64,000 nt of DNA from the IMG/VR virus record IMGVR_UViG_3300035703_000008, positions 62,001-126,000 of that record. One strand, given 5' to 3'. Numbering within the stretch: position 1 is the first letter of the stretch; each line of letters opens with the position of its first letter. The notes beneath the pieces were generated by a model that saw only the letters and a program-made list of their open reading frames with translations, was not told where the DNA came from and made no database searches. Both the position numbers and the translations under genes were made by a program. This document shows, in pieces, positions 457-24,739 of the stretch.

Positions 457-461
457 TCCAT

Positions 462-1332: not shown

Positions 1333-1423
1333 GGAGACGTGACCGAGAGGCCGAAGGTGCTCCCCTGCTAAGGGAGTATGCGCCAAAAGCGCATCGTGGG
1401 TTCGAATCCCACCGTCTCCGCCA
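1333..1423 (+). tRNA. tRNA-Ser(GCU)
   Basis: Acceptor GGAGACG/CGTCTCC, anticodon arm CTCCC-CTGCTAA-GGGAG, long variable arm, G73, CCA. Confidence 0.96.
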
Positions 1424-1427
1424 AGAC

Positions 1428-1860: not shown

Positions 1861-1913
1861 AACGATGTCTTTGCTGTGTCTGGGTTAAATATTTTCCTAT
1901 ACGGAGTCAAATC

Positions 1914-2108
1914 ATGGATATATCCATATTACTATTATTGGCAGCAGTGGCAGTGCTTGTATTTTTGTTGAGCAAAAAACAGAACCGTCCGCAAAATCTC
2001 GATGTCAACAACGATGGCGTGCTCAATGAAAAAGATGCAGAAATATTAGATCAGAATTTGCCCAAAGATCCCGACCCCCGCGTCGAAGAATCCCGGGATC
2101 GTAGATGA
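1914..2108 (+). CDS. small membrane-anchored protein with an EF-hand/dockerin-like Ca-binding loop
   Basis: N-terminal hydrophobic helix, then DVNNDGVLNEKD. GGAG Shine-Dalgarno upstream. Confidence 0.65.
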   Translation: MDISILLLLAAVAVLVFLLSKKQNRPQNLDVNNDGVLNEKDAEILDQNLPKDPDPRVEESRDRR

Positions 2109-2494
2109 TGTTGGGCACGATGAAAAAAATCGCGTCATTGGCCTGTGTGGCATTGATATCGTGGTCATGCACCGAGGAGTCTTCTCGCACCGGTGCCGAC
2201 GGATACACATTTGGCACCAAGCAGTTTGAGAAAAAAACCGTGACTGTGGAAATAGTAGTACATCCCACACTAGAAGAACTGCAGACCGAAGCCGAAAGAA
2301 TAGGCGCTGTGCGAAGAATCAATAACCAATCTGCGAGTGTCCAGGCATTTACTCATCTTTATCCACCCAATTTTGATACTTGCACCATACACATGGTAGA
2401 TCCTTCGGTCCATTACAGTCCGGAATTCGTGGGCCACGAATTCTTACATTGCGTGTACGGTCAGTGGCACACTGACAATCACAGTCGTCAATAA
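2105..2494 (+). CDS. hypothetical secreted/lipoprotein-like protein with an HExxH zinc-peptidase motif
   Basis: Signal-like MKKIASLACVALISWSC (likely start 2120) and GHEFLHCVYG. Confidence 0.6.
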   Translation: MMLGTMKKIASLACVALISWSCTEESSRTGADGYTFGTKQFEKKTVTVEIVVHPTLEELQTEAERIGAVRRINNQSASVQAFTHLYPPNFDTCTIHMVDPSVHYSPEFVGHEFLHCVYGQWHTDNHSRQ

Positions 2495-2504
2495 ACAAGA
2501 TCCA

Positions 2505-2579
2505 GCATCGTTAGCTCAGTGGTAGAGCAGGGCCCTTACAAGGCCAAGGTCGGGAGTTCGACCCTCTCACGATGCACCA
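2505..2579 (+). tRNA. tRNA-Val(UAC)
   Basis: Acceptor GCATCGT/ACGATGC, anticodon loop CTTACAA, TTCGACC, A73, CCA. G27-A43 mismatch. Confidence 0.92.
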
Positions 2580-2594
2580 GTCATACATAAACAT

Positions 2595-3911: not shown

Positions 3912-4252
3912 TGGTAGTGATACATATCAACGGCAACAACGGCTGCCGTATTTTCGGCGAAGTCACTAGAGAACGCGACTATGATCAACGGCAGGATCGT
4001 CCCAGCATGCGTCTCATGAACGAAGTATATCGTGTCAGTGAGCTGTTCCAGAATCTCGCACCAGCCCTGACAAATCGCGAAGTGGAAGTGCATCTTGACA
4101 TCAATCCCAACGAGCTGCATGGAAGTTCTTGCGTGATACAGCAAGCCATCGGCTATATAAGAGGTACCTGCAATGTGATCCCCATGGTCAAACCGCAGGC
4201 ATTCGCGGCCAGCTATGCAGCTGACCGATTCCGCAATCTCAAAGTAGCATAA
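3782..4252 (+). CDS. RNase H-like protein (YkuK/DUF458 family)
   Basis: VYLGADS, YTVVVVIH, RLMNEV, EVHLDINP, GSS, AADR motifs. Confidence 0.8.
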   Translation: MSKISIPDVIEFVNQQGPNTRVYLGADSERFRERGVWWAEYTVVVVIHINGNNGCRIFGEVTRERDYDQRQDRPSMRLMNEVYRVSELFQNLAPALTNREVEVHLDINPNELHGSSCVIQQAIGYIRGTCNVIPMVKPQAFAASYAADRFRNLKVA

Positions 4253-4262
4253 AGGAAACATC

Positions 4263-4499
4263 GTGGCCAGAATTACCAGCGAAACCGCTGCACAGAAAGT
4301 CGGTAGCAAATATGATCTCATCCTGATCGCGTCGCGACGTGCTCGCGAACTCAGACACGGACATGCACCCATGGTCGCTGCCGAAGACGACAACGAAGTG
4401 GTCATCGCTCTCAGAGAGATCGAACAAGGTCTTGTGGGTCGCGATTATCTTCTCAAGCAACCCGATCTCAAACACGAACCAAGGAAATCACGCACATGA
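4263..4499 (+). CDS. rpoZ: RNA polymerase omega subunit homologue
   Basis: MARIT...KYDLILIASRRAREL..GHAPMV...VVIALREIEQG matches the RpoZ pattern. GTG start with AGGA Shine-Dalgarno. Confidence 0.85.
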   Translation: MARITSETAAQKVGSKYDLILIASRRARELRHGHAPMVAAEDDNEVVIALREIEQGLVGRDYLLKQPDLKHEPRKSRT

Positions 4500-4651
4500 A
4501 AGCCAACAGCCAATATCGCATGAGCAAGCAATCAAAGATCTTCTTAGGCAATGCCTGGAATCGCAGGGATCGCGAACAGTATCGCCGGGCTTTGATCCAG
4601 GCCGAATTGGACAGCAAGATTGTAGTGCGAGCCAAAATCAAAGATAATTAA
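4496..4651 (+). CDS. small basic hypothetical protein, 51 aa
   Basis: Manual ORF MKANSQYRMSKQSKIFLG...KIKDN*, ATGA-coupled to the rpoZ stop. Confidence 0.6.
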   Translation: MKANSQYRMSKQSKIFLGNAWNRRDREQYRRALIQAELDSKIVVRAKIKDN

Positions 4652-4658
4652 AAGTATT

Positions 4659-4733
4659 GCTGGATTAGCTCAGGGGTAGAGCAACCGCCTTGTAAGCGGT
4701 AGGTCGTCAGTTCGAATCCGACATCCAGCACCA
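4659..4733 (+). tRNA. tRNA-Thr(UGU)
   Basis: Acceptor GCTGGAT/ATCCAGC, anticodon arm ACCGC-CTTGTAA-GCGGT, TTCGAAT, CCA. Confidence 0.96.
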
Positions 4734-6516: not shown

Positions 6517-6669
6517 AGTTATACACGATGCTGTGGTGTAAATAAAGAAGACTTCGCAGGGGGATGCGCCCGGCAGCTCTGGATCTATCTGCCGGAATCG
6601 TTTGCACGGTGAGACTCCGTGAGAACAGTGGCAGTTCCTACACGCCCTGGGAGATGCCATAAATAAGGT

Positions 6670-6962
6670 TTATCGCTGTATGAAGCGCGGCGAAATCGGT
6701 TCTGGACGCGGGTTCGATTCCCGCCCGGTCCACCATAAGCATGTTCTTTGAGGTCTTGGTCGTTACCAGCGTGGCAAAAACGGCGACAGAGCATGCTTAT
6801 GATGGGCCGGACCTGGTTTCGACAGGGCAAGGAGTAGCCAAGTGGACAGCGGGGTAGGCGATGACCCTAAATCAAGCAAAACCTATAAACGCCAATGATG
6901 AGGTGTTTGCACTGGCCGCTTGAGCCATGCCGGGGTAGCTATACCTTGTTACCAAAAATAGC
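6670..6962 (+). ncRNA. ssrA: circularly permuted (two-piece) tmRNA: acceptor piece ~6670-6735, intervening segment 6736-6803, coding piece from 6804; tag ANDEVFALAA*
   Basis: The 3' tRNA-like part (GCGGG-TTCGATT-CCCGC-CCGGTCC-A-CCA, ends 6735) lies before the 5' part (GGGCCGG-ACCTGGTTTCGAC, starts 6804). G3-U70 alanyl determinant. P2 pairing ACAGCGG/TCGCTGT. pk1 GGGT/ACCC plus TAGG/CCTA. Resume codon GCC at 6891, tag stop at 6923. Confidence 0.93.
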
Positions 6963-6988
6963 AAAACCCGCTCCGGCGGGTTTTTTTT
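6963..6988 (+). terminator. rho-independent terminator after ssrA
   Basis: AAAACCCGC-TCCG-GCGGG followed by T8. Confidence 0.88.
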
Positions 6989-7061
6989 GATTTCTTCTCC
7001 TGGCAGTTAAATACATGCCAGCAGCGCCACCATCCCGGTGACGTCGGTTCAACCTCGACGC

Positions 7062-7090
7062 TTGACACATCGATGTCTTTACTGTATTGT
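7062..7090 (+). promoter_or_regulatory. candidate sigma70 promoter of the porin-MFS operon, overlapped by palindromes
   Basis: TTGACA-17 nt-TATTGT. The spacer contains the palindrome ACATCGATGT, and CTGTAT/ATACAG overlaps the -10 box. Confidence 0.5.
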
Positions 7091-7157: not shown

Positions 7158-7709
7158 ATGAAGAAGATCATCGCATCTATTGTTGTATCTTTGTCTACCA
7201 TTGCGGCTCAAGCCTCGACCACCAGCGTGCTCAGCCTGGGCCAAGAAGAACTCAACTCTACTTCCAAGGCCAATCTCGCTACTGTTAGCATTTCAAAACG
7301 CCTGGAGTCGGGTGTGGAATTTTTCGCAAATGCCCATAGGATCACTCCTGTGGCAGAAAAGTCTTCGTCGGAATATCGCCCCGAACTGGGGTTGGGTTAT
7401 GCTGCACCTACACCGGCGGGGCTGGCCTATGCTCAAGCCTTTGTAGGCCAGCGTGTGCTACCCAATCGAGCCAATGCCGACTATCATGGCGTTCGTGTGG
7501 GTCTGCGCACACCCATCGCTGCAGGTTGGTTCACTGATGTATCGTATCGGTATCGCGACGCACACAGCATCGCCTGGGAAAACCATACCTATGTGGCTGG
7601 GGTGGGCCATAGTATCACCAAATCCACTGCAGTGGTAGTTGGTGTTGGGAAAACCACCGGCGATTATCAATCTAAAGGTGTACAACTGCTGTTGGTCACT
7701 CGCCACTGA
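7158..7709 (+). CDS. outer-membrane beta-barrel/porin-like protein
   Basis: Signal peptide MKKIIASIVVSLSTIAAQA and alternating amphipathic beta-strands (YRPELGLGY, VRVGLRTPI, FTDVSYRYR, HTYVAGVGH). Confidence 0.7.
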   Translation: MKKIIASIVVSLSTIAAQASTTSVLSLGQEELNSTSKANLATVSISKRLESGVEFFANAHRITPVAEKSSSEYRPELGLGYAAPTPAGLAYAQAFVGQRVLPNRANADYHGVRVGLRTPIAAGWFTDVSYRYRDAHSIAWENHTYVAGVGHSITKSTAVVVGVGKTTGDYQSKGVQLLLVTRH

Positions 7710-7721
7710 TAGGAAACGATC

Positions 7722-8960
7722 ATGGACATCAAAACTCGCGTAAATCTTTCGTCGACCATGGGAGCAACATTTGCCTGGTACGATTTTGCTATCTTTAACA
7801 TCGCTGTGGCACTGATATTCCCCCAGCTGTTTTTCACGGGCATGGGTTTTCTCATCCCTGTATTGGTGTTTGCCGTAGGTACAGTGGCTCGCCCTTTGGG
7901 CAGCTTGGTTTTTGGCTACATCGGAGATCGGCTCGGTCGAAAAACAGCTTTGATATCTACCCTGTATCTCACTGGCATCACCACTGTGGCCATTGGCCTC
8001 ATGCCCACATATCAGGACATAGGCGTGATCGCCACTGTGCTGCTGATCACGGCTCGCTTGATACAGACCGTGGCCGTGGGAGGAGAATGGGCCGCGGCCT
8101 CGACCATGATGCTGGAATACAATGTGGAAAGTACCAGGAAAGGATTTATCTCCAGTTTTATCACTTCGGGATTCGCACTGGCACACATCCTCGCTTCCTT
8201 GGTTTTCATGATAGTCACGCAGTTCGGCGATGAATTCTTTGCCACTGTTGGCTGGAGGATTCCTTTCTTACTCAGCGCCTTCATGTTGTTGATCGGTGTA
8301 TATGTGCGTCGTAAAATCCTGGAAACTCCCGAGTTTGAGCAAATGAAATCCCAGGGAACCATACAAAAAAATCCAGTGGCTGCGCTGTTCAGGGATCATC
8401 TCAGGCCCATGGTAGTGGGTGCCTTGTCTGTGAGCCTAGGGCCTGCCTGGTTTTATACCCTGATCACTGCAGGATCAGCTTATGTGCTCAGCGCTGGACT
8501 ATTGACTCGGTCCGACCTCACTCAACAGCAGTTTGCGGCATGGTGGGTGATACTGGGCATCATGTTGTTGTGTGGATGGCTGATCGACAAAGTCAAGCCC
8601 TACTACATGTTTGTGGCCACTTCGGTGTTTTCAGTCATATTGGCCTTGCCAGTGATCGGTTGGCTGCAGCAAGGGCAAATTTTGTGGGCCATGGTAGGCA
8701 CTGGGGTGATCATGACCCCGGCACTGATGACAGCTCCTTATCTTTTTTGCAAAATGTACCCGGCGCCGGTTCGACAAACCGGTAGCGGATGGACCTATGG
8801 CATAGGACTGGCATTGTCGGGACTGTTTACGGTGCTGGCACAAAAAGTGGTGGGCACCACCGGTGATATCTACTCGCTGATCTATGTGTTTGGAGTGTTG
8901 ACTGTGATCACTTTGGTTACCGGCGGACTTTACCTGAGAAAGTACAGCCAAGAATCATGA
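7722..8960 (+). CDS. MFS transporter, metabolite:H+ symporter (MHS; ShiA/ProP-like)
   Basis: GATFAWYDFAIF, ARPLGSLVFGYIGDRLGRK, GGEW, GWRIPF, ETPEF; about 12 hydrophobic segments. Confidence 0.92.
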   Translation: MDIKTRVNLSSTMGATFAWYDFAIFNIAVALIFPQLFFTGMGFLIPVLVFAVGTVARPLGSLVFGYIGDRLGRKTALISTLYLTGITTVAIGLMPTYQDIGVIATVLLITARLIQTVAVGGEWAAASTMMLEYNVESTRKGFISSFITSGFALAHILASLVFMIVTQFGDEFFATVGWRIPFLLSAFMLLIGVYVRRKILETPEFEQMKSQGTIQKNPVAALFRDHLRPMVVGALSVSLGPAWFYTLITAGSAYVLSAGLLTRSDLTQQQFAAWWVILGIMLLCGWLIDKVKPYYMFVATSVFSVILALPVIGWLQQGQILWAMVGTGVIMTPALMTAPYLFCKMYPAPVRQTGSGWTYGIGLALSGLFTVLAQKVVGTTGDIYSLIYVFGVLTVITLVTGGLYLRKYSQES

Positions 8961-10414
8961 TGCTGATAGATCTCTTACTGAATCACCCCAATGGTGATCA
9001 TATCGTATATCGTGGCACTGGTGTGGTGACCGTGAGAGATCTACAAACCATGTGCCAAAGCACTGCAAGATCTCTCAGAGACATGAATGTCGGTCCCGGG
9101 GATCGAGTGGTACTGATCGGCAATGACAGCGCTGAATGGGCTGCTACATTTTGGGCTCTTGTGCTGTTGGGAGCCCACGCTGTGATCCTACATGCAAATA
9201 TGCCGCAAGAACACGTGAACAACGTGATAAAAAAGCACCGAGTCAAACTGGTTTGCACAGATCAATCGAGATTCGACGATGTCGCTGTTTTTGACATAAA
9301 GTCAAAGGTTAAATCGAACATCGGACAGCCGATCGCACCATTTGATCATAAATCAAACACGCTGCTGAGCTGGCCTTCGTCGGGCACCAATGGCACATTC
9401 AAGCTCATCGAACATACCAATGCCAGTTTATGTGCGGCTACAATGTCTCTGGATAATTATGCATCCAGTCGCGAGGTACATCGCGGGGACGTGATTTTTT
9501 GCGGTGCCAAGATGTCGTTTGGCCTAGGATGGCTGTTCAATGTGCTGGGATGTTTGCACTTGCATATCACATCAGTGATTGGTACCGGCCTTGCAGAGTT
9601 GCGTAGTTTTTCGGCGATCGCCGAAAAACATCAGGTACAACATGTGGTAGTCACCCCTTACATATTAGACATCATACACAGAACATCCATGTGCCTTCCT
9701 GACAGTGTCAGGACTATATGTACCAGTGCGGAACCATTGCCTGATCGATTGATTGCGGACATAAAACAAAAATTTTCAATTGATGTAACAAACATCTACG
9801 GTCTTTGTGAATTGTTTATCGTGACCATGGCCGACCAAGATCGATCTTCCAACAGTGCTGGAAAGGTTGTCAACGGAGTAAATTATCGTTTGATCAGCGA
9901 TGATGGAAATGTTATCGGCCTGACTGGATGCGGAATCTTGCAGATCAAAAGTGGATCACAATTTGTTGGCTATCTCGATGACCCGGAATCTACTCGACAG
10001 GTGCTAAGAGATGGTTGGGTACATACCAACGACATGGTCGATGTGCTCGAGGACGGAGAAGTGATTTTCCTAGGGCGAGCCAATTCATGTATAAAAGTCA
10101 AAGGTCATTGGGTATCTTTGCTAGAAATCGAGCAGGCGATATCTCAGATCAGTGGTATCAATGATTGTGTGGTAGTAAAATCCACAGACTCTCAGGGATT
10201 CGATTCGATTTCAGCTTTTGTAGTCGTCGACAACAATTCTGATCTGAGATGTGTGGACACGATCAGAGATCGCCTGAGACGTGATCTAGGTAAAAAATAT
10301 CTCATGCCTTCAGACATATATCTCATCGATGAGATTCCTCGCACAGTGAATCTCAAAAAACTTCGTAATATTTCAGCCATGAATCAATGGCTAGAACAAA
10401 GGAACATGATATGA
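8957..10414 (+). CDS. AMP-forming acyl-CoA ligase (ANL adenylating enzyme), copy 1
   Basis: P-loop variant SSGTNGTFK, YGLCE, GWVHTND, GRANSCIKVKGHWVSLLEIE, IPRTVNLKKLR. ATGA-coupled to the MFS gene. Confidence 0.87.
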   Translation: MMLIDLLLNHPNGDHIVYRGTGVVTVRDLQTMCQSTARSLRDMNVGPGDRVVLIGNDSAEWAATFWALVLLGAHAVILHANMPQEHVNNVIKKHRVKLVCTDQSRFDDVAVFDIKSKVKSNIGQPIAPFDHKSNTLLSWPSSGTNGTFKLIEHTNASLCAATMSLDNYASSREVHRGDVIFCGAKMSFGLGWLFNVLGCLHLHITSVIGTGLAELRSFSAIAEKHQVQHVVVTPYILDIIHRTSMCLPDSVRTICTSAEPLPDRLIADIKQKFSIDVTNIYGLCELFIVTMADQDRSSNSAGKVVNGVNYRLISDDGNVIGLTGCGILQIKSGSQFVGYLDDPESTRQVLRDGWVHTNDMVDVLEDGEVIFLGRANSCIKVKGHWVSLLEIEQAISQISGINDCVVVKSTDSQGFDSISAFVVVDNNSDLRCVDTIRDRLRRDLGKKYLMPSDIYLIDEIPRTVNLKKLRNISAMNQWLEQRNMI

Positions 10415-11862
10415 ACTTTGCTGAATTTATTTTTGATCGGGTACGAAATCATGCTGGTGTGGCCTATTATTGCGGCGACCAGCAACTGTTGTTTCGAGAC
10501 CTCGAACCCCGAGTGAGAGAAACTGCTGGCTTCCTTGGCAGCCAGGGTGTGGATCATCACAGCACTGTGATGATCAATCTTCCCAACAGCCCCGAGTGGC
10601 CGGTGATATTTTATGCTCTTACCTTACTGGGTGCCCGGATCATGGTCACCCATGCCAATCTCGATCCGATCAGCCTCAAAACCATCGCTGCCAGGATCAA
10701 GTCCACACACATCATCGCTGTGACTGAGCGGGATCTAGGTCCGATCAATGTGTTGCTAGAACACATAACACATGACAGATCGGGATTTTTTTACAACGGC
10801 AGTCATGACTACAACGATGATGATCTGCACTTCATGATCACCACATCGGGCACCAGCGGTCGGCAGAAGATCGTCAAGCATCGCCATATTTCTTGTGTGA
10901 ATCTTTGTCGCGAGTTTGACCGTCGTGAAACCATCTATCAGGACCTCGATGAGTCGTCGGTGATCCTGTGTACAGCTAATCTAAACTTTCTCTACGGTCT
11001 TGGCACCTGTGTTTGTCTAGGTCCCAGCCAGGGTGTGCCCACCGTGATCTTCGACCAAACTCTCACTCCCAAAAATATCATCGGGTTGGCCAATCGATTC
11101 CGAGTCACACATCTGTTCAGTGGCCCAGCTGGGTACATGCTGATGACCAAGTATCCCGGAGACGACCTCCTACCCGACTCTGTCAAGTGTTGCGTGTCCG
11201 GCGGAGAGAAACTGCTGGCCAGCGTGTCCAGAGAATTTGAAAACAAGTTTGGACATCGAGTCTACGACTGCATCGGATGCAGCGAGTTGTTTTGGTTTTT
11301 TCTCGGGGAATGGTCTGGCAACATCAGATCCGGCAGCATGGGTCGGCCTTTCCCCGGGCACGATATCAAGGTGGTCAATGCCGACGGTACTCCGTGTCCG
11401 GTTGGCGAAATTGGCTACCTTGTGGTCAAGACCAACGTGATCAGTGCTGGTTATTTTGACGATGCTGAAGGCAACAGATTCAGCTTCCGCGACGGATGGT
11501 TTTGGACCAATGATCTCGTCAAGGTTGACGAGGATGGATACTTCTTTTATCTGGGCCGGCACGGACAACTGCACAAGGTGCACGGGATCTGGGTCAATCT
11601 CCTGGAAGTGGAAGACTATGTGAGTGCCTTGCCGGAAATCACCGACTGCCTGGCCAAGTTCGTGATCGACGATCGTGGACTGGTCGAAGTGGAAGCACAG
11701 GTAGTGACATCTCTGCAGGAGCCAGCAGCTGACATACGCCGTCGGCTACTGGAGATAGTTCCGCCCTGCCAGATGCCAAAATTTGTTACCTTGGTCAATG
11801 AAATACCTCGCACCATGAACGGCAAAAAAATACGTGATCTCGCTATCATCAATCAATCATGA
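10411..11862 (+). CDS. AMP-forming acyl-CoA ligase, benzoate-CoA-ligase-like, copy 2
   Basis: TTSGTSGRQK, YDCIGCSE, GSMGRPFPG, DGWFWTNDL, KVHGIWVNLLEVE, IPRTMNGKKIR. Start taken at the ATGA overlap (10411) rather than the ORF-track start 10387. Confidence 0.88.
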   Translation: MNFAEFIFDRVRNHAGVAYYCGDQQLLFRDLEPRVRETAGFLGSQGVDHHSTVMINLPNSPEWPVIFYALTLLGARIMVTHANLDPISLKTIAARIKSTHIIAVTERDLGPINVLLEHITHDRSGFFYNGSHDYNDDDLHFMITTSGTSGRQKIVKHRHISCVNLCREFDRRETIYQDLDESSVILCTANLNFLYGLGTCVCLGPSQGVPTVIFDQTLTPKNIIGLANRFRVTHLFSGPAGYMLMTKYPGDDLLPDSVKCCVSGGEKLLASVSREFENKFGHRVYDCIGCSELFWFFLGEWSGNIRSGSMGRPFPGHDIKVVNADGTPCPVGEIGYLVVKTNVISAGYFDDAEGNRFSFRDGWFWTNDLVKVDEDGYFFYLGRHGQLHKVHGIWVNLLEVEDYVSALPEITDCLAKFVIDDRGLVEVEAQVVTSLQEPAADIRRRLLEIVPPCQMPKFVTLVNEIPRTMNGKKIRDLAIINQS

Positions 11863-12590
11863 TCAAATCGCGCCCTTTGATTTTCATCGGTTCTCGATAC
11901 TACATGAACGATCTAGCCATCACAGCCGAGCTCATGGGTCTGGAAGTGCTGGGAATACTGGATCATCAGTATCACGGCAACACCGACGAAATTTCGAGCA
12001 TACCAGTGATCGGCAGCGATCACTGGTTGCTGGATCCCGAGAATCGAGAAGCACGAGTCTGGAAAAACACCTGTGATTTTTTTGTAGCCACACTGGACAC
12101 CGGTGAGCAAGAACGTGATCCAGCGAAAAATCGCACTCGACTCCGACAACAACGAATCAACATGCTCGAAGAGCTGGCACTTGGCACTGTCAATCTCATT
12201 GATCCTGAATCGCGCATCGTGCGCGATCAACGGTCGAGATTCTCACGTATCTCTCTGGGTCGCGGCATTTATGTGGCTCCGTTCGTGGACATCAATCACG
12301 AAGTAGTGATAGGCGACTTTTCCACCTTTGAGCATCAGAGCTATATCGGACATCATATCACCATCGGCAAGAACGTCACAGTATTGCCCACTGCTCGTAT
12401 ATGCCACTGCGACATCGGTGATCACGCTGTGATTGGCTACGGGTCCTGGACTAGACACGACGAACGCAAGAGTCGCTATCGTATAGGTTCTAGAAGCACA
12501 GTGTGGAGCCACACCTGTATCGATCGAAGCTGCCCCGACGATCATGTCTATACCAATGTTGGTAAGATTTTACGGAAAAGATCGGTATAG
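11859..12590 (+). CDS. NeuD/PglD-like sugar acyltransferase (left-handed beta-helix)
   Basis: N-terminal Rossmann-like LIFIGS...LEVLGILD, then hexapeptide repeats (ISLGRGIYV, VVIGDFSTF, ITIGKNVTV, CDIGDHAVIG). ATGA-coupled. Confidence 0.8.
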   Translation: MIKSRPLIFIGSRYYMNDLAITAELMGLEVLGILDHQYHGNTDEISSIPVIGSDHWLLDPENREARVWKNTCDFFVATLDTGEQERDPAKNRTRLRQQRINMLEELALGTVNLIDPESRIVRDQRSRFSRISLGRGIYVAPFVDINHEVVIGDFSTFEHQSYIGHHITIGKNVTVLPTARICHCDIGDHAVIGYGSWTRHDERKSRYRIGSRSTVWSHTCIDRSCPDDHVYTNVGKILRKRSV

Positions 12591-12591: not shown

Positions 12592-13437
12592 CTAAAATCT
12601 TTTCCATCTCGATATCGAGTCTTGATGAGATCGATACCATGGTCCTAGTTCTTTGGCGAGAAAATCATTGTCGGAAAGGCTGTCTCGACTGAGTATCTTT
12701 CCTAAAAATTTTTTTCTGAAGTCAACGCTGTAGCATGTGCGACCCGAATACAAGGCATCGAATAACACATTGGTCAATCTTCGATGATTACTGAGACAAA
12801 GATGTCCGGTGCGTATATCACCAGCAGTGAGACCACATATGGCTTTGTCTGACCACTCCTGTCCCAGCTCCCATTGGCTGACTTGAAAAAGATAAAAATC
12901 AGTCCAGGTAAAACCTTTGATGTTGTGGTCGAATCCGCGAGAAAATTCTCTCAATGCAGAAAGACTTTCTTGAAAACATGGTATGGCCAAGACTCGGTAA
13001 TCGTGCTGTTGTGCGTGTAGTACTACATGCCCCAGCCAGTCAGCCATTGACACCGATCGCAGCTCGGGATCAAAAATATTGTATATTTTTCCAAAGTTTG
13101 CTTTGCCGTAGTGGTCTATCCACACCGAGACATCAGTCTCGCACACATCATCACGATCCAACCAAGCACGGTTGGGATTGGTCAGCACAAGTACCACTAA
13201 ATCTCCACTGGAAAAATTCGATCTCTGTTGATGCCATTGCCAACGAGAATATTCCATGGCCGACCCTGATGCCGAATAGTTTGAGTAGCTGAGCCCCAGA
13301 TATCTAGCCAGACTTGCTGGCCAAATAGGAAAATCTAATAGGTCACTGAGAGGAACCGGTGGCTTACGCTGATGCAGATGATGTCCGGGCATGTCACACC
13401 CATAACTATCACCAAAAATCCAAAGCCTGGATGTCAT
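12592..13437 (-). CDS. SGNH/GDSL-like hydrolase or acyltransferase
   Basis: WIFGDSYG, NYSASGSA, DIRTGHL (DxxxH-like). Tandem paralogue of the 13441 gene. Confidence 0.65.
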   Translation of the reverse strand: MTSRLWIFGDSYGCDMPGHHLHQRKPPVPLSDLLDFPIWPASLARYLGLSYSNYSASGSAMEYSRWQWHQQRSNFSSGDLVVLVLTNPNRAWLDRDDVCETDVSVWIDHYGKANFGKIYNIFDPELRSVSMADWLGHVVLHAQQHDYRVLAIPCFQESLSALREFSRGFDHNIKGFTWTDFYLFQVSQWELGQEWSDKAICGLTAGDIRTGHLCLSNHRRLTNVLFDALYSGRTCYSVDFRKKFLGKILSRDSLSDNDFLAKELGPWYRSHQDSISRWKRF

Positions 13438-13440: not shown

Positions 13441-14274
13441 TTAGGAAATAGTCAATGCCGATTGTATACGGCGGTTGTGTCGAGTATACCAACTTCCAAG
13501 TTCGCGACAAAGAAAATCATGATCGCGTAATGTATCAGGGTTGAGTATTTCTGCCACGAAATTCTGTTTTAGATTCCAGGTCATGTTGTGTTGTTGAGCA
13601 TTTATAGCTCGGTAGATCAGGTCAGCAAGCACGCCGTGATTGGTGGCGGTAAAATGCCCGTTGCGTATGTCTCCGCCGAACATCAATGGACTTTTGTATC
13701 TCCAAGCTGGGTATAACTCCAGCACAGATAATTCGTATAAGTTGATATCAAGCCATACGCAACAACCAGGGACTTGGGTCAAGCCCTCGAACAATGTTTT
13801 TACGATGCGTTGACTCTCAATGAACGCAGGGACTATCACTAGTCGATATCCATTGTGTTGGGCATGTAATATCGCATGTCCCACCCAACCAGCGAGATTC
13901 TCGCCTTTGATGTCGGGATCAACAAGATTGAGTATGGATTTTGCGCACTGCTTGTCTAGCTGTTCTAACCAGGAGAAAGAATGCGCATTTTCCGGCTGAG
14001 CTCGATCAAACCACACACGGGATGGTTCCGTAAGGATCAATGTTACTACATCCCCGGGATTGAAGTTGGCTTTTTGTTGGTTCCACTGCCATTGGGAATA
14101 TTCAATGGCGGATCCACTAACCGAAAAATTCCTGTACTCCATGCCCAATTTACGGCATAGTAGATCTGGCCAAACAGGCAATTCCAAATCTATCAGTTGA
14201 TCACGACGACGTCCAGGGTGGTCCGAGAGATCGCACCCAAAGCTATCACCAAACACCCAAAATTTCGCTGTCAT
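13441..14274 (-). CDS. SGNH/GDSL-like hydrolase or acyltransferase
   Basis: WVFGDSFG, NFSVSGSA, DIRNGHF. Start placed at ATG 14274, 5 nt after a TAAATA box. Confidence 0.65.
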   Translation of the reverse strand: MTAKFWVFGDSFGCDLSDHPGRRRDQLIDLELPVWPDLLCRKLGMEYRNFSVSGSAIEYSQWQWNQQKANFNPGDVVTLILTEPSRVWFDRAQPENAHSFSWLEQLDKQCAKSILNLVDPDIKGENLAGWVGHAILHAQHNGYRLVIVPAFIESQRIVKTLFEGLTQVPGCCVWLDINLYELSVLELYPAWRYKSPLMFGGDIRNGHFTATNHGVLADLIYRAINAQQHNMTWNLKQNFVAEILNPDTLRDHDFLCRELGSWYTRHNRRIQSALTIS

Positions 14275-14293
14275 GACAGTATTTAACCACAGG

Positions 14294-14322
14294 TTGACCA
14301 AAAATTGTTCTTTTCGTATAAT
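14294..14322 (+). promoter_or_regulatory. early promoter 1 (GTTGACCAAWAATT family)
   Basis: TTGACC-aaaaattgttcttttcg(17)-TATAAT. Confidence 0.85.
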
Positions 14323-14557: not shown

Positions 14558-14586
14558 TTGACCAAAAATTCCCAATTTCGTATAAT
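14558..14586 (+). promoter_or_regulatory. early promoter 2
   Basis: TTGACC-aaaaattcccaatttcg(17)-TATAAT. Confidence 0.85.
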
Positions 14587-15561: not shown

Positions 15562-15590
15562 TTGACCAATAATTGCACCATCGCTATAAT
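15562..15590 (+). promoter_or_regulatory. early promoter 3 (AAA ATPase)
   Basis: TTGACC-aataattgcaccatcgc(17)-TATAAT. Confidence 0.85.
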
Positions 15591-22465: not shown

Positions 22466-22717
22466 TTGATCAAGATACAGTTCCATTCGTTTGGCATGGG
22501 CGATGTCGAGGACCCGGAGCTCTATGCTGCCCATCCCATACGGGAATGGCAGAACACCGAACATGGTCAATGGGTCATGGAACACGGTCGTGACCTCACG
22601 TTCCACACGCAGGTAGACCACAACTCCATGGGCTACCGCGTTTTCATCACAGGATATCTACAAGAAGACATCCATGCCACAGAATATTTCCTAAGATGGC
22701 CCAAGGTAAAATACTAG
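22466..22717 (+). CDS. hypothetical phage protein
   Basis: 83-aa ORF (FGMGDVEDPELYAA...GQWVMEH) between thyX and the epimerase. Confidence 0.65.
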   Translation: MIKIQFHSFGMGDVEDPELYAAHPIREWQNTEHGQWVMEHGRDLTFHTQVDHNSMGYRVFITGYLQEDIHATEYFLRWPKVKY

Positions 22718-23670
22718 TCACCGGTGGACTTGGTTTCATCGGACACAATATAGTAGCACAGCTACAGGCTCTGGGTCATGCAATGGTCATCGTCGATGCT
22801 GTGTCAGACTATGGCATCATACCAAGAGATGAGCTAGAAGGTCTGGTAAGAGAACGAGCACGTCTCATCGATCAGACTGATCTCTATCTCACTGACATCA
22901 CAGATCCCGGCCTGGATCACATCTTCCAAGACCACGACATTGCCACAGTGATCCACTTGGCCAGTTTTCCCCGACAAAAAGTGGTTAATCGAGATCCAGT
23001 GTCGGGCAGTCGCGTCATGAGTGAAGGCCTGCTCAATCTCCTGGAACTCAGTGTTGCCCATCATGTTGATCGATTCGTGTATGTAAGTTCCAGCATGGTC
23101 TATGGTGAATTCACTGATGACACCACCGAAGACCATCCATGTGCTCCACAAGGACAATACGGGATCATGAAGCTGGCTGGAGAATGGCTCACACGCGACT
23201 ACACCCAACGCCGTGGCATGTCGCATGTGATCGTGCGTCCCAGTGCTGTGTACGGAGCCAGAGACGTGGAAGATCGCGTGGTCAGCCAGTTCATGATGGC
23301 TGCACATCGCGGCGAAACTCTACGAGTGCGTGGTGCCGGCGAGTGCCTAGATTTCACTGATGTGAGAGACACTGCACGCGGTATCGTTCTCGCTGCTGTC
23401 ACCCCTGCTGCTGCCAACAACACTTACAATATCACTCGTGGACGCGGTCGTAGCTTGCAGGAAGCCGCAGAGATCGCTGTAAAAATCTCAGGATCGGGCA
23501 CTATCGATGTTCTGGATCGCGATCCTTTGTTCCCCAGTCGGGGTGCATTAAATATAGATCGAGCCCGGAGAGATCTTAGCTTTGAACCCACTATAGACAT
23601 CGAGCAAGGCTTTGAAGACTACTACCGCTGGATTACGGATCCCATTCGCAGGTCTACCTCGTCAGTATAA
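22696..23670 (+). CDS. NAD-dependent nucleotide-sugar epimerase/dehydratase (extended SDR)
   Basis: ILVTGGLGFIG, HLAS, SSSMVYG, catalytic YGIMK (YxxxK), VRPSAVYG. Confidence 0.92.
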   Translation: MAQGKILVTGGLGFIGHNIVAQLQALGHAMVIVDAVSDYGIIPRDELEGLVRERARLIDQTDLYLTDITDPGLDHIFQDHDIATVIHLASFPRQKVVNRDPVSGSRVMSEGLLNLLELSVAHHVDRFVYVSSSMVYGEFTDDTTEDHPCAPQGQYGIMKLAGEWLTRDYTQRRGMSHVIVRPSAVYGARDVEDRVVSQFMMAAHRGETLRVRGAGECLDFTDVRDTARGIVLAAVTPAAANNTYNITRGRGRSLQEAAEIAVKISGSGTIDVLDRDPLFPSRGALNIDRARRDLSFEPTIDIEQGFEDYYRWITDPIRRSTSSV

Positions 23671-24739
23671 TACCCTGAGGTCAGAGATCCTTGACATCAC
23701 TGACCAGGTGTTGAGGTCAGGTCAAGTGATGTCTGGCAACTACACTGCCGAGTTCGAGCATTGGCTGGCACGCAAGAATAGATCAAAATTCGCGATCACG
23801 TGTCATTCTGGAACACAGGCCTTGGAGATCATCGCCGAGTTTTATCGTCAGCACTGGCCCTGCGATCCAGGACACACTCCCACGGTGGTCATGCCCAGCA
23901 TTTCTTATGTGGCCACTGCCAATGCATTTGTTCGAGCTAGATGGGATATAAGATTCGCTGATGTTGATGCCCATGGCATGCTTTCACTCAAGGACGTGCC
24001 CAACGATTCTCTCACACACTGGAATGCCATCTGCTTGGTGGGCTTGTATGGCCAGAGTGTGTATCAGTATTCAGACACACAGTTTTGGAAAAGTGTGCGA
24101 TACAAAAATCAAATCGTGATCGAGGATGGCGCCCAACATTGGCTCAGTGCCGGATCTTCGCGCATAGGGCATGCCACTGCCATAAGTTTTGATCCTACCA
24201 AAAATCTCGGCAACTACGGAAACGGTGGGGCGGTAGTCACCGACGACGAGGATCTAGCTACATTTGCACGAGCTTGGTGCGCGAATGGCAAGCCATATTA
24301 TCGCCAACCGGGCACCAACAGTAGGATGAGCGAAATAGATTGTGCCCAGATGTTGGTAAAAGTCAATCACTTGGACCAATGGCAGGTCCGTCGCCGGCAT
24401 ATCACTGAATACTGGTATAGTCGGCTGGCAGGAAAACGACAGGTGCGTAGTCTTGCAGATCTATCCAACATGGATACCCACTGTTTCCATAAATTTGTGA
24501 TTGATGCTGATCACAGGAATGACCTGCAAAGACATCTAAAAGAACACGGAATAGAAACTCGTGTACACTATGACCAGGCCTTGTTTGAACATGCTGGACT
24601 GAGTCAATTCATCAACCCCGGTGTGCTAAGTTCAGCGGCTTCGTTGTGTCGTCGTGTACTGAGCTTGCCACTCTACCCCGAACTCACGGATCTAGAAGTA
24701 GACTACATCATCGACCAGGTGATAGATTTCTCTTCATAA
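23612..24739 (+). CDS. DegT/DnrJ/EryC1/StrS-family PLP-dependent sugar aminotransferase
   Basis: SGTQAL, VATANA, IEDGAQ, SFDPTKNLGNYGNGG (PLP lysine), GTNSRMSE, VLSLPLYPEL. Confidence 0.93.
   Translation: MKTTTAGLRIPFAGLPRQYNTLRSEILDITDQVLRSGQVMSGNYTAEFEHWLARKNRSKFAITCHSGTQALEIIAEFYRQHWPCDPGHTPTVVMPSISYVATANAFVRARWDIRFADVDAHGMLSLKDVPNDSLTHWNAICLVGLYGQSVYQYSDTQFWKSVRYKNQIVIEDGAQHWLSAGSSRIGHATAISFDPTKNLGNYGNGGAVVTDDEDLATFARAWCANGKPYYRQPGTNSRMSEIDCAQMLVKVNHLDQWQVRRRHITEYWYSRLAGKRQVRSLADLSNMDTHCFHKFVIDADHRNDLQRHLKEHGIETRVHYDQALFEHAGLSQFINPGVLSSAASLCRRVLSLPLYPELTDLEVDYIIDQVIDFSS

What the first reader, a model, noticed from the sequence alone, without database searches (positions are those of the whole stretch)
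7158..12590. Phage operon for importing, activating and transferring a carboxylic (probably aromatic) acid: porin, MHS transporter, two acyl-CoA ligases, NeuD-like acyltransferase
Seen: five co-oriented genes. The last four are joined by ATGA stop-start overlaps (8957, 10411, 11859), so they form one translational unit. Established: MHS-family MFS proteins carry shikimate, citrate and aromatic acids; benzoate-CoA-ligase-like ANL enzymes make acyl-CoA; NeuD/PglD left-handed beta-helix enzymes move acyl groups from acyl-CoA onto nucleotide sugars. Inference: the phage pulls an environmental acid across both membranes, activates it, and puts a non-acetyl acyl group on a sugar made by the downstream glycan region (virion or host-surface decoration). 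Two SGNH-like genes abut it tail-to-tail. I know of no described phage pathway with this complete layout.
Basis: partly seen in the sequence, partly recalled or inferred. Interest (0 to 1): 0.88.

Follow-up and report, generated by a model that had tools for sequence, protein, structure and literature searches.

The report
Phage acid-uptake and acyl-transfer operon
A giant bacteriophage carries a rare, tightly packed set of genes that probably imports an organic acid, activates it with ATP and attaches it to another molecule, most likely a nucleotide-linked sugar; which acid and which final target remain unknown.

Summary
Five co-oriented genes lie at 7158-12590, and three ATGA overlaps join the last four. 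They encode a signal-peptide outer-membrane beta-barrel, an MHS-like MFS transporter, two divergent ANL adenylate-forming ligases (28% identical) and a NeuD/PglD/VioB-like hexapeptide acyltransferase. Two cytoplasmic SGNH-fold paralogues abut tail-to-tail.

The window comes from a 209-kb IMG/VR contig, a jumbo phage distantly related to Pseudomonas phage PA5oct. It carries a betaproteobacterial-type tmRNA.

The gene order recurs in at least four other metagenomic contigs, usually with one ligase of either type. The ligase is the hub of the module. Elsewhere it pairs with MFS plus a GDSL-like protein, or with the acyltransferase plus an MfnB-like furan synthase.

The operon is a rare accessory island: 0 of 79 lineage relatives in IMG/VR have it. 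The downstream SDR-aminotransferase pair is lineage core.

"Import, activate, transfer onto an amino sugar" is the best reading, but it is inferred. "Aromatic" is weakly supported and "porin" is not established. The SDR looks like an epimerase, not a dehydratase, and no glycosyltransferase was found. I rate it a new variant of a known kind, of moderate interest.

The parts
6963..6984 (+). Intrinsic-terminator-like hairpin plus T-run that closes the upstream tmRNA gene and marks the 5' boundary of the operon
   Evidence: 9-bp stem, 5 GC pairs, T tail; sequence read
7062..7090 (+). Sigma-70-like promoter candidate (TTGACA-17-TATTGT), 68 nt upstream of the first gene
   Evidence: This is a consensus match only, not evidence of function.
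7158..7709 (+). Small outer-membrane beta-barrel protein (183 aa). It has a Sec signal peptide ending AQA, and its relatives end in an aromatic residue. Porin-like, but not an established porin.
   Evidence: Pfam Porin_4 E=0.008, 16.5 bits, below the cut-off of 27. AF2 pLDDT 70.5 with 9 strands over residues 38-181. Foldseek hits are only outer-membrane barrels; the best is the Omp32 anion porin, over part of its length. Conserved at this position in L002, L005 and L006.
7722..8960 (+). MFS transporter (412 aa) nearest to the metabolite:H+ symporter (MHS) family
   Evidence: MFS_1 56 bits; TIGR00883 255.6 bits (cut-off 443); shikimate transporter 168, ProP 144, TcuC 119, aromatic-acid AAHS only 60 bits. 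Multiple hydrophobic segments. It is the best-conserved part of the module (47-98% identity among 8 loci).
8957..10414 (+). ANL adenylate-forming ligase 1 (485 aa), belonging to a phage-restricted clade
   Evidence: AMP-binding 134 bits and AMP-binding_C 40.6 bits. Its own clade is P0122-P0129 at 32-63% identity. It is 28% identical to ligase 2. Against L006 the gene is a mosaic hot-spot (60-70% nt identity vs 91-98% in the flanks).
10411..11862 (+). ANL adenylate-forming ligase 2 (483 aa from the ATG in the ATGA overlap), related to benzoate/anthranilate-CoA ligases
   Evidence: AMP-binding 168 bits. TIGR02262 benz_CoA_lig 196 bits (cut-off 375). Best PDB matches are anthranilate-CoA ligase 4wv3 at 153 bits and benzoate-CoA ligases at 140 bits; the next family scores 96 bits. 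It is the single ligase in L002-L005 (59-60% identity).
11859..12590 (+). Left-handed beta-helix acyltransferase (243 aa), a distant NeuD/PglD/VioB (class I sugar N-acyltransferase)-like protein
   Evidence: Hexapep 41.5 bits. TIGR03570 69 bits, E=3e-19, covering 2-196/202 of the profile (cut-off 160.8). PDB matches WeeI 4m9c, VioB, PerB and PglD. The family has about 20 clusters, all metagenomic.
12592..13437 (-). Cytoplasmic SGNH-fold protein a (281 aa), convergent with the operon
   Evidence: No Pfam hit. 123 representatives in 1.8 billion proteins. Invariant G9 D10 S11, H212, N217 and H218; D207 and R209 nearly invariant. AF2 pLDDT 89.8. Foldseek top hits are SGNH esterases and TesA, prob 1.0, TM 0.3-0.5. 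No signal peptide or TM segment.
13441..14301 (-). Cytoplasmic SGNH-fold protein b (286 aa), a paralogue of a (37% identity)
   Evidence: The pair is conserved in L002-L004.
22696..23670 (+). Extended SDR, a nucleotide-sugar epimerase-like enzyme. It is a possible partner pathway and is core to the lineage.
   Evidence: Epimerase 145 bits. GalE 107 and dTDP-glucose dehydratase 106 bits, both below their cut-offs. The SSSMVYGE and YGIMK motifs are epimerase-like. Best PDB matches are UDP-Glc and UDP-GlcA 4-epimerases. Present in 44 of 79 lineage relatives.
23612..24739 (+). DegT/PseC/WecE-type sugar aminotransferase. This is the longest ORF; the true start is probably downstream, since the relatives' product is 336 aa. 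It is a possible source of the amino-sugar acceptor and is core to the lineage.
   Evidence: DegT_DnrJ_EryC1 197 bits. PseC 125 bits and dTDP-4-amino-4,6-dideoxygalactose transaminase 115 bits. Present in 37 of 79 relatives. Absent from the PA5oct group.

Best explanation
This is an accessory island of a PA5oct-like jumbo phage whose host is probably a betaproteobacterium. It encodes a self-contained uptake, activation and transfer route for a carboxylic acid.

Shown:
- A signal-peptide outer-membrane beta-barrel, an MHS-like inner-membrane MFS transporter, one or two cytoplasmic ANL adenylate-forming enzymes of phage-restricted clades, and a PglD/VioB-like left-handed beta-helix acyltransferase are encoded as one translationally coupled unit.
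- This unit recurs in related phages.

Inferred:
- The barrel and the MFS bring an external organic acid into the infected cell.
- The ligase(s) convert it, with ATP, to an acyl-adenylate and then most likely to an acyl-CoA. No carrier protein is encoded nearby.
- The acyltransferase moves the acyl group onto an amine or hydroxyl of a nucleotide-linked sugar. The best candidate is the amino sugar made by the lineage-core SDR plus DegT aminotransferase about 10 kb downstream.
- The island would therefore give this sub-lineage a non-standard acyl decoration on a phage-made glycoconjugate. The final target (virion, host envelope or DNA) is unknown.
- The two convergent cytoplasmic SGNH-fold paralogues probably act as thioesterases or esterases that edit or recycle the acyl intermediates.
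- The two ligases are interchangeable alternatives in relatives, so here they probably widen or split the range of acids rather than act in strict sequence.

The identity of the acid is open. Ligase 2 leans toward small aromatic or heteroaromatic acids.
For: - Gene identities and coupling.
- Phage origin: the window is part of IMGVR_UViG_3300035703_000008, 208,932 bp. The VWA/DUF2201 protein is 49% identical to that of the PA5oct group. The window carries five tRNAs and a beta-type tmRNA.
- Conserved order OMP-MFS-ligase-LbH, followed by two convergent SGNH genes, with 4-bp overlaps, in a 341-kb and a 207-kb ENA contig and in Logan/JGI contigs.
- The ligase is the hub. MFS-ligase-GDSL-like occurs in L007, L008, L009 and L190. 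LbH-ligase, with or without an MfnB-like furan synthase, occurs in unrelated large phage contigs L011-L015 and L019-L022.
- Catalytic residues are retained: A5 Glu, A7 Asp and A10 Lys in both ligases.
- No PP-binding carrier protein among the neighbouring small ORFs.
- The LbH N-terminal domain and LIxP motif align to VioB/PerB/PglD, and the window protein has a His at the catalytic-His position of WeeI (PMC9271549 read).
- In the 236-kb relative L023, a family member sits beside a GT4 glycosyltransferase at the same genomic position.
- SDR and DegT are conserved with the operon in the 341-kb relative.
- Ligase 2 and the L011-type ligase score best on the benzoate-CoA ligase family (196 and 281 bits) and on anthranilate/benzoate-CoA ligase structures.
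Against: - No biochemical evidence exists. Every family-specific curated cut-off is missed: TIGR00883, TIGR02262 and TIGR03570.
- Both ligases lack the P-loop Pro, have TND instead of TGD in A7, and lack the A8 hinge Asp. Mutating that Pro abolished activity in 4-chlorobenzoate-CoA ligase, according to the review PMC8388817. CoA-ligase chemistry is therefore not assured.
- The class I conserved Asn is replaced in the LbH, and the catalytic His is not invariant across its family.
- The SDR looks like an epimerase, not a 4,6-dehydratase.
- No glycosyltransferase was recognised in the window.
- SDR and DegT occur in most lineage relatives without the operon, and the LbH-ligase pairs in other phages have no DegT within 10 kb. 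The link to that sugar pathway rests on family precedent only.
- The direction of transport by the MFS is unknown.
- The barrel is too small to be a classical 16-strand porin.
Confidence: 0.45

Rival explanations
1. Small-molecule route. The ligase plus the acyltransferase (or, in other phages, the GDSL-like enzyme) make or modify a diffusible small molecule, such as an acylated metabolite, a signal or an inhibitor. Alternatively they neutralise an anti-phage compound. The MFS and the outer-membrane barrel would move that compound out or in. No glycan is involved.
For: - The ligase pairs with three different partner types: LbH, a GDSL-like protein and an MfnB-like furan synthase. This looks like a small biosynthetic cassette.
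- No glycosyltransferase was found in the window.
- The LbH-ligase loci in other phages lack sugar genes within 10 kb.
- LbH enzymes also include xenobiotic and antibiotic acetyltransferases (established knowledge; an example appears, PMC7885111).
Against: - The LbH has the two-domain NeuD/PglD/VioB architecture, with a strongly conserved N-terminal domain that binds the nucleotide in those enzymes.
- MHS transporters are typically importers (established knowledge).
- A relative couples the LbH with a GT4 glycosyltransferase.
Confidence: 0.2
2. Two independent functions that happen to be adjacent. The barrel, MFS and ligase(s) are an auxiliary metabolic module that scavenges an organic acid into the host acyl-CoA pool for energy or carbon during infection. 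The LbH is an ordinary acetyl-CoA-dependent sugar N-acetyltransferase.
For: - Most characterised class I enzymes use acetyl-CoA (PMC9271549).
- Other LbH genes occur without ligases at the same variable site in relatives L023, L111 and L158.
- MFS-ligase occurs without the LbH in L007-L009 and L190.
Against: - The ATGA overlap couples ligase and LbH here and in relatives.
- The LbH-ligase pairing recurs in unrelated phage lineages with overlapping or near-abutting reading frames, in either order.
- A single activation step with no downstream catabolic enzymes gives little metabolic gain.
Confidence: 0.12
3. Nucleic-acid or nucleotide modification. The acyl group ends up on a hypermodified DNA base or on a nucleotide-derived molecule rather than on a glycan. 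The island would then contribute to protection against host nucleases or immune signalling.
For: - The window is rich in radical-SAM enzymes and also encodes ThyX, an aminotransferase and a carbamoyltransferase. Enzyme types like these are known from phage DNA hypermodification pathways (established knowledge).
- The conserved N-terminal domain of the LbH would fit any nucleotide-linked acceptor.
Against: No DNA glycosyltransferase, base-hydroxymethylase or kinase typical of hypermodification systems was identified. All solved relatives of the LbH act on NDP-sugars. Nothing in the data points to this directly.
Confidence: 0.1
4. Envelope lipid or polymer re-acylation, analogous to LplT-Aas (an MFS flippase plus an acyl-ACP synthetase/acyltransferase) or to Dlt (the ANL enzyme DltA plus the SGNH-like DltD). 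This would remodel the host envelope, for example to exclude superinfection.
For: The co-occurrence of MFS, ANL and SGNH-fold proteins resembles the composition of those systems (from memory). Aas appears among the weak NCBIfam hits of ligase 2 (93 bits).
Against: - The MFS is MHS-like, not LplT-like.
- There is no carrier protein and no MBOAT.
- The SGNH-fold proteins have no signal peptide or membrane anchor, so they cannot act in the periplasm.
- The ligases are nearest to aryl-CoA ligases.
Confidence: 0.05

Closest known systems
Class I (PglD/PerB/VioB/WeeI/NeuD) nucleotide-sugar N-acyltransferases
   Same: Both have a bilobal layout: an N-terminal globular domain followed by a left-handed beta-helix. 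The GxLD and LIxP sequence motifs are shared. The window protein has a His at the catalytic-His position. In the window's genome the protein occurs together with a DegT-type aminotransferase (PMC9271549).
   Different: The score is far below the TIGR03570 cut-off (69 vs 160.8 bits), and the protein is about 40 residues longer. The strictly conserved Asn is replaced, and the His is not invariant in the phage family. The gene is translationally coupled to an acid-activating ligase, which argues for a non-acetyl donor. The family was found only in viral or metagenomic contigs.
Aryl-CoA ligases (benzoate-, 2-aminobenzoate-, 4-hydroxybenzoate-CoA ligase; TIGR02262) with neighbouring transport genes in aromatic-acid catabolic clusters
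   Same: Both have the ANL two-domain enzyme. For ligase 2, the best HMM and PDB matches are benzoate/anthranilate-CoA ligases. A transporter gene lies next to the ligase, as in catabolic clusters (PMC8388817).
   Different: Ligase 2 scores below the family cut-off (196 vs 375 bits). The P-loop (no Pro), A7 (TND) and A8 (no hinge Asp) motifs are atypical. No reductase, oxygenase or beta-oxidation genes follow. The transporter is MHS-like, not AAHS-like. The downstream enzyme is an acyltransferase, so the route is biosynthetic rather than catabolic.
Vibrio cholerae O1 O-antigen tetronate tailoring genes (rfbK-O): an acid-activating ANL-like enzyme plus a hexapeptide acyltransferase that N-acylates perosamine (recalled from memory, not checked here)
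   Same: The logic is the same: a dedicated adenylating enzyme supplies an unusual acyl group, and an LbH enzyme puts it on an NDP-4-amino sugar.
   Different: That system includes an acyl carrier protein and reductases and makes its acid internally. Here no carrier protein is encoded, the acid appears to be imported, and the system is phage-borne.
FadL-FadD vectorial acylation (an outer-membrane barrel plus an acyl-CoA synthetase; from memory)
   Same: An outer-membrane beta-barrel is combined with an ANL ligase that traps an imported acid as a thioester.
   Different: FadL is a 14-strand barrel of about 420 aa, whereas this barrel is about 164 aa. Here an MFS is interposed. The ligases are not close to the FadD models, and the product feeds an acyltransferase rather than beta-oxidation.
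SGNH/GDSL hydrolases such as TesA acyl-CoA thioesterase I
   Same: They share the fold, the N-terminal GDS nucleophile block and a C-terminal His block.
   Different: No Pfam GDSL model is reached. The proteins carry a large helical insertion. The Asp-His spacing is unusual (D207...H212). TM-scores are only 0.3-0.5.

Membership tests
ANL superfamily (adenylate-forming enzymes, Pfam PF00501/PF13193) | AMP-binding domain above the Pfam gathering score | tested here: met
   Ligase 1 scores 134.3 bits and ligase 2 scores 168.4 bits against a cut-off of 29.9.
ANL superfamily (adenylate-forming enzymes, Pfam PF00501/PF13193) | C-terminal domain (AMP-binding_C) with the A10 catalytic Lys | tested here: met
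   Ligase 1 scores 40.6 bits (cut-off 24.5). Ligase 2 scores only 17.5 bits, but it aligns over 1-76/76 of the profile. The Lys is present in PRTxNxKK in both.
ANL superfamily (adenylate-forming enzymes, Pfam PF00501/PF13193) | Canonical core motifs: A3 (T/S)SG(T/S)TGxPK, A7 TGD and the A8 hinge Asp | tested here: not met
   A3 reads SSGTNGTFK and TSGTSGRQK (no Pro). A7 reads TND. A8 reads GRANSC and GRHGQL (no Asp). The A5 Glu and the A7 Asp are kept. The same deviations are conserved across the phage clades. Motif definitions come from PMC8388817.
Benzoate-CoA ligase family (NCBIfam TIGR02262) | Score at or above the curated cut-off (375.25 bits) | tested here: not met
   Ligase 2 scores 196 bits (its best family). 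Ligase 1 scores 136.7 bits; its best family is HbdA at 180 bits against a cut-off of 1000.
Benzoate-CoA ligase family (NCBIfam TIGR02262) | Aromatic-acid substrate specificity | not testable with these tools
   Only relative similarity is available: 4wv3 at 153 bits and benzoate-CoA ligases at 140 bits, against 96 bits for the next family.
Metabolite:H+ symporter (MHS) family of the MFS (TIGR00883) | Score at or above the curated cut-off (443.45 bits) | tested here: not met
   The score is 255.6 bits, covering 1-400/400 of the profile. It is the best family by a wide margin. General MFS membership is met (MFS_1 56.2 bits vs 33.4).
NeuD/PglB/VioB sugar acyltransferases (TIGR03570; class I sugar N-acetyltransferases) | Score at or above the curated cut-off (160.8 bits) | tested here: not met
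   The score is 69.4 bits, E=3.1e-19, covering 2-196/202 of the profile.
NeuD/PglB/VioB sugar acyltransferases (TIGR03570; class I sugar N-acetyltransferases) | Bilobal architecture: an N-terminal nucleotide-binding domain followed by a left-handed beta-helix | tested here: inconclusive
   Sequence coverage spans both domains. The family profile aligns its positions 3-50 to VioB residues 2-49 and its beta-helix to VioB, PerB and PglD. No structure prediction was run for this protein.
NeuD/PglB/VioB sugar acyltransferases (TIGR03570; class I sugar N-acetyltransferases) | Catalytic His and the strictly conserved Asn about 7 residues upstream (PMC9271549) | tested here: inconclusive
   The window protein has a His aligned to the WeeI catalytic His (IGHH vs VAHD), but it has a His where the Asn should be. 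Across the phage family neither position is invariant.
NeuD/PglB/VioB sugar acyltransferases (TIGR03570; class I sugar N-acetyltransferases) | Acts on an NDP-amino sugar with an acyl-CoA donor | not testable with these tools
   Only contextual evidence is available: DegT and an SDR in the same genome, and a GT4 beside a family member in L023.
Gram-negative general porins (Pfam Porin_4) | Score at or above the gathering cut-off, and a 16-strand barrel of about 300 or more residues | tested here: not met
   The score is 16.5 bits against 27, and it matches only the C-terminal 70 profile positions. The mature protein is about 164 aa with 9 predicted strands. Structural matches cover only parts of porins.
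Outer-membrane beta-barrel proteins (general) | Sec signal peptide, an all-beta amphipathic barrel and a C-terminal aromatic residue | tested here: met
   The signal peptide MKKII...AAQA is read. The AF2 model is an all-beta sheet with pLDDT 70.5. Foldseek hits are exclusively outer-membrane barrels. Relatives end in Y or F, whereas the window copy ends in H.
SGNH/GDSL hydrolases | Block I GDS nucleophile, block V His and the SGNH flavodoxin-like fold | tested here: met
   G9 D10 S11 and H212 are invariant in 42 homologues. The AF2 model has pLDDT 89.8. The top 19 Foldseek hits are all SGNH enzymes. Pfam GDSL models are not reached by the window proteins, so this is a very divergent member.

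The most novel reading that the evidence does not exclude
A phage-restricted ligase-acyltransferase hub lets jumbo phages put an unusual acyl tag on a nucleotide-linked amino sugar made by the lineage's core SDR-aminotransferase genes. The acid may be imported or phage-made, and may be aromatic or furan-type. The result would be a variable chemical mark on the virion, the DNA or the host surface. The mark would evolve by cassette exchange, as suggested by the swapping of ligase 1 and the outer-membrane barrel between near-identical genomes. If so, this would be the first phage pathway that takes up an environmental small molecule in order to build a phage-specific macromolecular decoration.
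Probability: 0.2. Interest if true: 0.8.

Novelty: new variant of a known kind. Interest (0 to 1): 0.58.

Why it matters
Phage auxiliary genes are usually single enzymes borrowed from host metabolism. Here a jumbo phage carries a complete and conserved envelope-to-cytoplasm route: an outer-membrane protein, an inner-membrane transporter, activating enzyme(s) and a transferase. The route is built from protein clades seen only in viral or metagenomic contigs.

If the reading is right, phages can make their own chemistry depend on a compound taken from the environment. It would also identify a modular acyl-tailoring system in which the ligase is the hub and the acid sources and transferases are exchangeable. 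Such a system could explain variable glycan or nucleic-acid decorations in large phages.

The ligase and acyltransferase clades would also be new enzymes for making unusual acyl-CoAs and N-acyl sugars. If the acid turns out to be ordinary and the transferase uses acetyl-CoA, the island is just another accessory metabolic module.

Tried and rejected
1. blastn of the operon against 50,697 cultured or deposited phage records found no match. tblastn with ligase 2 gave only hits of 26% identity or less, mostly in unannotated or mis-assigned records.

2. The PA5oct region homologous to the window backbone has no operon, and the PA5oct group has no DegT.

3. A search of 185,579 species genomes for the LbH family found none. 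The pattern-based sensitivity of that search is limited. Bacterial MHS homologues reach 37% identity at most. An ANL gene is nearby in about 11 of 80 such loci, but none is close. No cellular ancestor was identified.

4. I looked for a carrier protein (PP-binding) among ten neighbouring ORFs, most of them small, and found none. This argues against a Dlt- or NRPS-like loading mechanism.

5. I rejected the reading of the SDR as a 4,6-dehydratase. It carries the epimerase-type SSSxVYG motif, and its best structural relatives are 4-epimerases.

6. I tested whether the 311-320-aa GDSL-like proteins of L007, L009 and L190 are homologues of the window's SGNH-fold pair. No homology was detectable.

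7. I did not build a tree of the ligases against characterised benzoate-, anthranilate- or fatty-acid-CoA ligases. HMM and PDB scores served as a proxy.

8. The search for related loci with the SGNH alignment failed because the alignment has no conserved stretch. The context of the distant homologue P0186 was uninformative.

9. PDB sequence searches for the MFS and for the barrel were uninformative.

10. Literature searches for phage MFS/ligase modules, MfnB in phages and benzoate-CoA ligase as a viral AMG found nothing relevant.

Full report
**What is there**

The + strand between 7158 and 12590 carries five ORFs:
- 7158-7709 (183 aa)
- 7722-8960 (412 aa)
- 8957-10414 (485 aa)
- 10411-11862 (483 aa, counted from the ATG that forms the overlap; a longer ORF starts at 10387)
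- 11859-12590 (243 aa)

I read ATGA directly at 8957, 10411 and 11859. The first two genes are 12 nt apart, with an AGGAA ribosome-binding site between them. A hairpin plus T-run at 6963-6984 closes the upstream tmRNA gene. A TTGACA-17-TATTGT site at 7062-7090 precedes the first gene; this is a consensus match only. Two convergent genes (12592-13437 and 13441-14301) begin 1 nt after the last stop codon.

**What the proteins are**

- **Gene 1.** It has a classical signal peptide ending AQA. It hits Pfam Porin_4 only below threshold (16.5 bits vs 27), and only over the last 70 profile positions. An AlphaFold model built from four homologues (pLDDT 70.5) is an all-beta sheet of nine strands over residues 38-181. 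Foldseek returns only outer-membrane barrels; the best is the Omp32 anion porin, matched over part of its length. It is therefore a small outer-membrane beta-barrel. It is too small to be a classical porin, and a channel function is unproven.
- **Gene 2.** It is an MFS protein whose best family by far is the metabolite:H+ symporter family (TIGR00883, 256 bits, below the cut-off of 443). The aromatic-acid AAHS family scores only 60 bits.
- **Genes 3 and 4.** Both are full-length ANL enzymes (AMP-binding 134 and 168 bits), but they are only 28% identical to each other.
  - Ligase 2 is nearest to the benzoate-CoA ligase family (196 bits, cut-off 375). Its best solved relatives are anthranilate- and benzoate-CoA ligases (153 and 140 bits, against 96 bits for the next family).
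  - Ligase 1 has no clear nearest family.
  - Both keep the A5 Glu, the A7 Asp and the A10 Lys. Both lack the P-loop Pro, have TND instead of TGD, and lack the A8 hinge Asp. These deviations are shared by all the phage ligase clades examined (motif definitions from PMC8388817).
- **Gene 5.** It is a left-handed beta-helix protein that matches the NeuD/PglB/VioB model over its full length (E=3e-19), though below the cut-off.
  - Its family profile aligns to VioB in both domains, and to PerB, PglD and WeeI.
  - The window protein has a His at the catalytic-His position. The class I conserved Asn is replaced, and neither residue is invariant in the phage family. The invariant residues of that family lie mostly in the N-terminal domain, which binds the nucleotide in PglD-type enzymes (PMC9271549).
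- **The two convergent genes.** They are 37% identical paralogues with no Pfam hit. They have an invariant GDS near the N-terminus, an invariant His and a confident SGNH-like model (pLDDT 89.8). The top structural hits are all SGNH esterases or TesA, at modest TM-scores.
- **Localisation.** Neither the convergent pair, the ligases nor the acyltransferase has a signal peptide, and only ligase 1 shows one weakly hydrophobic stretch. They should all act in the cytoplasm.

**Where it comes from**

The window is part of IMGVR_UViG_3300035703_000008, a contig of 208,932 bp. Its VWA/DUF2201 protein is 49% identical to that of the Pseudomonas jumbo phage PA5oct group. PA5oct has the same radical-SAM, RNaseH, MoxR-ATPase and VWA backbone, but no operon. 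The window also carries five tRNAs and a two-piece tmRNA that matches Rfam beta_tmRNA at 155 bits. This points to a betaproteobacterial host, and hence a Gram-negative one, which fits a phage-encoded outer-membrane protein.

**Conservation and modularity**

- *Ligase 2.* It has only two close relatives among 5.8 billion proteins (59-60% identity; the next is 29%). They lie on a 341-kb and a 207-kb ENA contig and on short Logan contigs. Their layout is barrel, MFS, one ligase, acyltransferase, followed by two convergent SGNH genes, and the 4-bp overlaps are kept.
- *Ligase 1.* It has its own clade.
  - L006 has the same two-ligase layout as the window.
  - L016 has MFS, a ligase-1-type enzyme and the acyltransferase.
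  - L007, L008, L009 and L190 have MFS and a ligase-1-type enzyme followed by a 311-320-aa GDSL-like protein in place of the acyltransferase.
- *The acyltransferase family.* It has about 20 clusters, all metagenomic.
  - In unrelated large phage contigs it sits directly upstream of a third ligase clade. That ligase is either fused to, or followed by, an MfnB-like (5-formylfuran-3-yl)methyl-phosphate synthase homologue in L011-L015. It occurs without that homologue in L019-L022.
  - A pattern scan of 185,579 species genomes found no cellular copy.

The ligase is therefore the hub. Its acid-supply partners and its transferase partners are exchangeable.

**How rare it is, and how it relates to the sugar genes**

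I fetched 79 other IMG/VR loci of the same lineage (MoxR 69-83% identical) with up to 10 kb on each side.
- None has the barrel, the MFS, either ligase or the SGNH pair.
- 44 have the SDR and 37 have the DegT aminotransferase.
- The block SDR, DegT, a convergent large repetitive protein and a carbamoyltransferase is lineage core.
- The stretch upstream of MoxR is hypervariable and rich in tRNA and tmRNA genes. Other LbH genes occur there in L023, L111 and L158; in L023 the LbH lies beside a GT4 glycosyltransferase.
- In IMG/VR the MFS occurs only in this one contig.

The operon is thus a rare accessory island. It sits in genomes that already carry a core pathway for making a sugar amine.

**Mosaicism**

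- Against L006, nucleotide identity is 91-98% across the barrel, the MFS and ligase 2. It falls to 60-70% across ligase 1.
- Between L002 and L005, identity is 98% for the MFS, 84% for the ligase, 79% for the acyltransferase and only 42% for the barrel.
- Ligase 1 and the barrel therefore behave as exchangeable or fast-evolving cassettes.

**Best explanation**

An external organic acid is taken up through the barrel and the MFS. The ligase(s) activate it to an acyl-adenylate. The acyl group is then most likely passed to CoA, because no carrier protein was found among the neighbouring ORFs. The acyltransferase transfers it to a nucleotide-linked acceptor. The best candidate acceptor is the amino sugar from the core SDR-DegT genes. 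The SGNH pair probably edits or recycles thioesters or esters.

The gene identities, the translational coupling and the recurrence of the module are shown. Everything about substrates, the direction of transport and the acceptor is inferred. I put the whole chain at about 0.45.

**What weakens it**

- All family-specific cut-offs are missed.
- The ligase motifs are atypical.
- The acyltransferase active site departs from class I.
- The SDR carries the epimerase-type SSSMVYGE motif rather than the dehydratase TDE motif, and its best structural relatives are UDP-Glc and UDP-GlcA 4-epimerases.
- No glycosyltransferase was recognised in the window.
- LbH-ligase pairs in other phages have no DegT within 10 kb.

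**Rival explanations**

- A small-molecule biosynthetic or detoxifying cassette: 0.2.
- Two independent functions, that is acid scavenging plus an ordinary acetyltransferase: 0.12.
- Nucleotide or DNA modification: 0.1.
- LplT-Aas-like or Dlt-like envelope re-acylation: 0.05.

**On "aromatic"**

The transporter gives no support for an aromatic acid. Ligase 2 and the L011-type ligase lean toward the benzoate-CoA ligase family. In some phages the ligase is fused to a furan-forming enzyme homologue, which hints at a heteroaromatic acid. That remains speculation.

**Comparison with the known, and novelty**

The closest known logic is N-acyl tailoring of NDP-amino sugars by PglD/VioB-type enzymes, and the tetronate tailoring genes of Vibrio cholerae O1 (recalled from memory). 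The closest known uptake-activation logic is the aryl-CoA ligase/transporter clusters and FadL-FadD. None of these is phage-borne, and none combines all the parts. I found no paper describing such a phage module.

I rate it a new variant of a known kind, with interest 0.58. It is real, conserved and built from phage-restricted enzyme clades. However, it is biochemically uncharacterised, and it does not yet bear on a long-standing open question.

Noticed in passing
window 6634-7014 (+): A phage-encoded two-piece (circularly permuted) tmRNA lies immediately upstream of the operon. ARAGORN calls it tmRNA* with tag peptide ANDEVFALAA. Rfam beta_tmRNA scores 155 bits and tmRNA_permuted 134 bits. 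This suggests a betaproteobacterial host.
   Followed up: partly
window 168-4733 (+): A cluster of five tRNA genes: Arg-TCT, Gly-GCC, Ser-GCT, Val-TAC and Thr-TGT. In the lineage this tRNA/tmRNA-rich stretch upstream of MoxR is hypervariable.
   Followed up: partly
window 9049-10448 vs L006: Ligase 1 is a mosaic hot-spot. It shows 60-70% nucleotide identity to L006, while the flanking barrel, MFS and ligase 2 genes are 91-98% identical. This points to cassette replacement or strong diversifying selection.
   Followed up: partly
L002 8207-8758 vs L005 279-830: The outer-membrane barrel is only 42% identical between two contigs whose MFS proteins are 98% identical. The surface-exposed component is swapped or evolves fast.
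   Followed up: no
L011 10001-12899; L014 4540-7418: In unrelated large phage contigs, which also encode ribosomal protein S21, HSP70 and CsgG/F, the same acyltransferase family is followed by an ANL ligase. That ligase is fused to, or followed by, an MfnB-like (5-formylfuran-3-yl)methyl-phosphate synthase homologue (NF002576, about 255 bits). I know of no described ANL-MfnB fusion.
   Followed up: partly
window 37483-46122 (-): A run of radical-SAM proteins. Five ORFs have radical-SAM hits, and in three of them the SPASM domain lies N-terminal to the radical-SAM core, which is the reverse of the usual order.
   Followed up: no
window 24708-30062 (-): A 1784-aa protein with no family hit, convergent with and overlapping the end of the DegT gene. 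In lineage relatives it varies in length and aligns to itself at several offsets, indicating internal repeats. It always lies between DegT and a NodU-like carbamoyltransferase, which is at 34103-35584 in the window. It could be a target or a partner of the sugar pathway.
   Followed up: partly
window 52632-63983 (-): A giant ORF of at least 3783 aa that runs off the end of the window. It was not searched against any family library. A Peptidase_G2-like tail-fibre/spike protein lies just downstream at 50273-51808.
   Followed up: no
window 14294-14322, 14558-14586, 15562-15590 (+): Three identical promoter-like sites, TTGACC-17-TATAAT, lie in front of small genes and of the MoxR ATPase. They may be a phage-specific promoter class.
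   Followed up: no
L190 3354-4840: In this JGI contig, the ligase between the MFS and the GDSL-like gene is split into two ORFs of 318 and 169 aa. The cause could be a frameshift, an assembly error or a decaying copy.
   Followed up: no
L023 4729-10711: In a 236-kb relative, the site upstream of MoxR holds a different island: a P-loop/GNAT protein, a metallophosphoesterase, a GT4 glycosyltransferase, a PstS-like PBP_like_2 protein and an LbH acyltransferase.
   Followed up: partly
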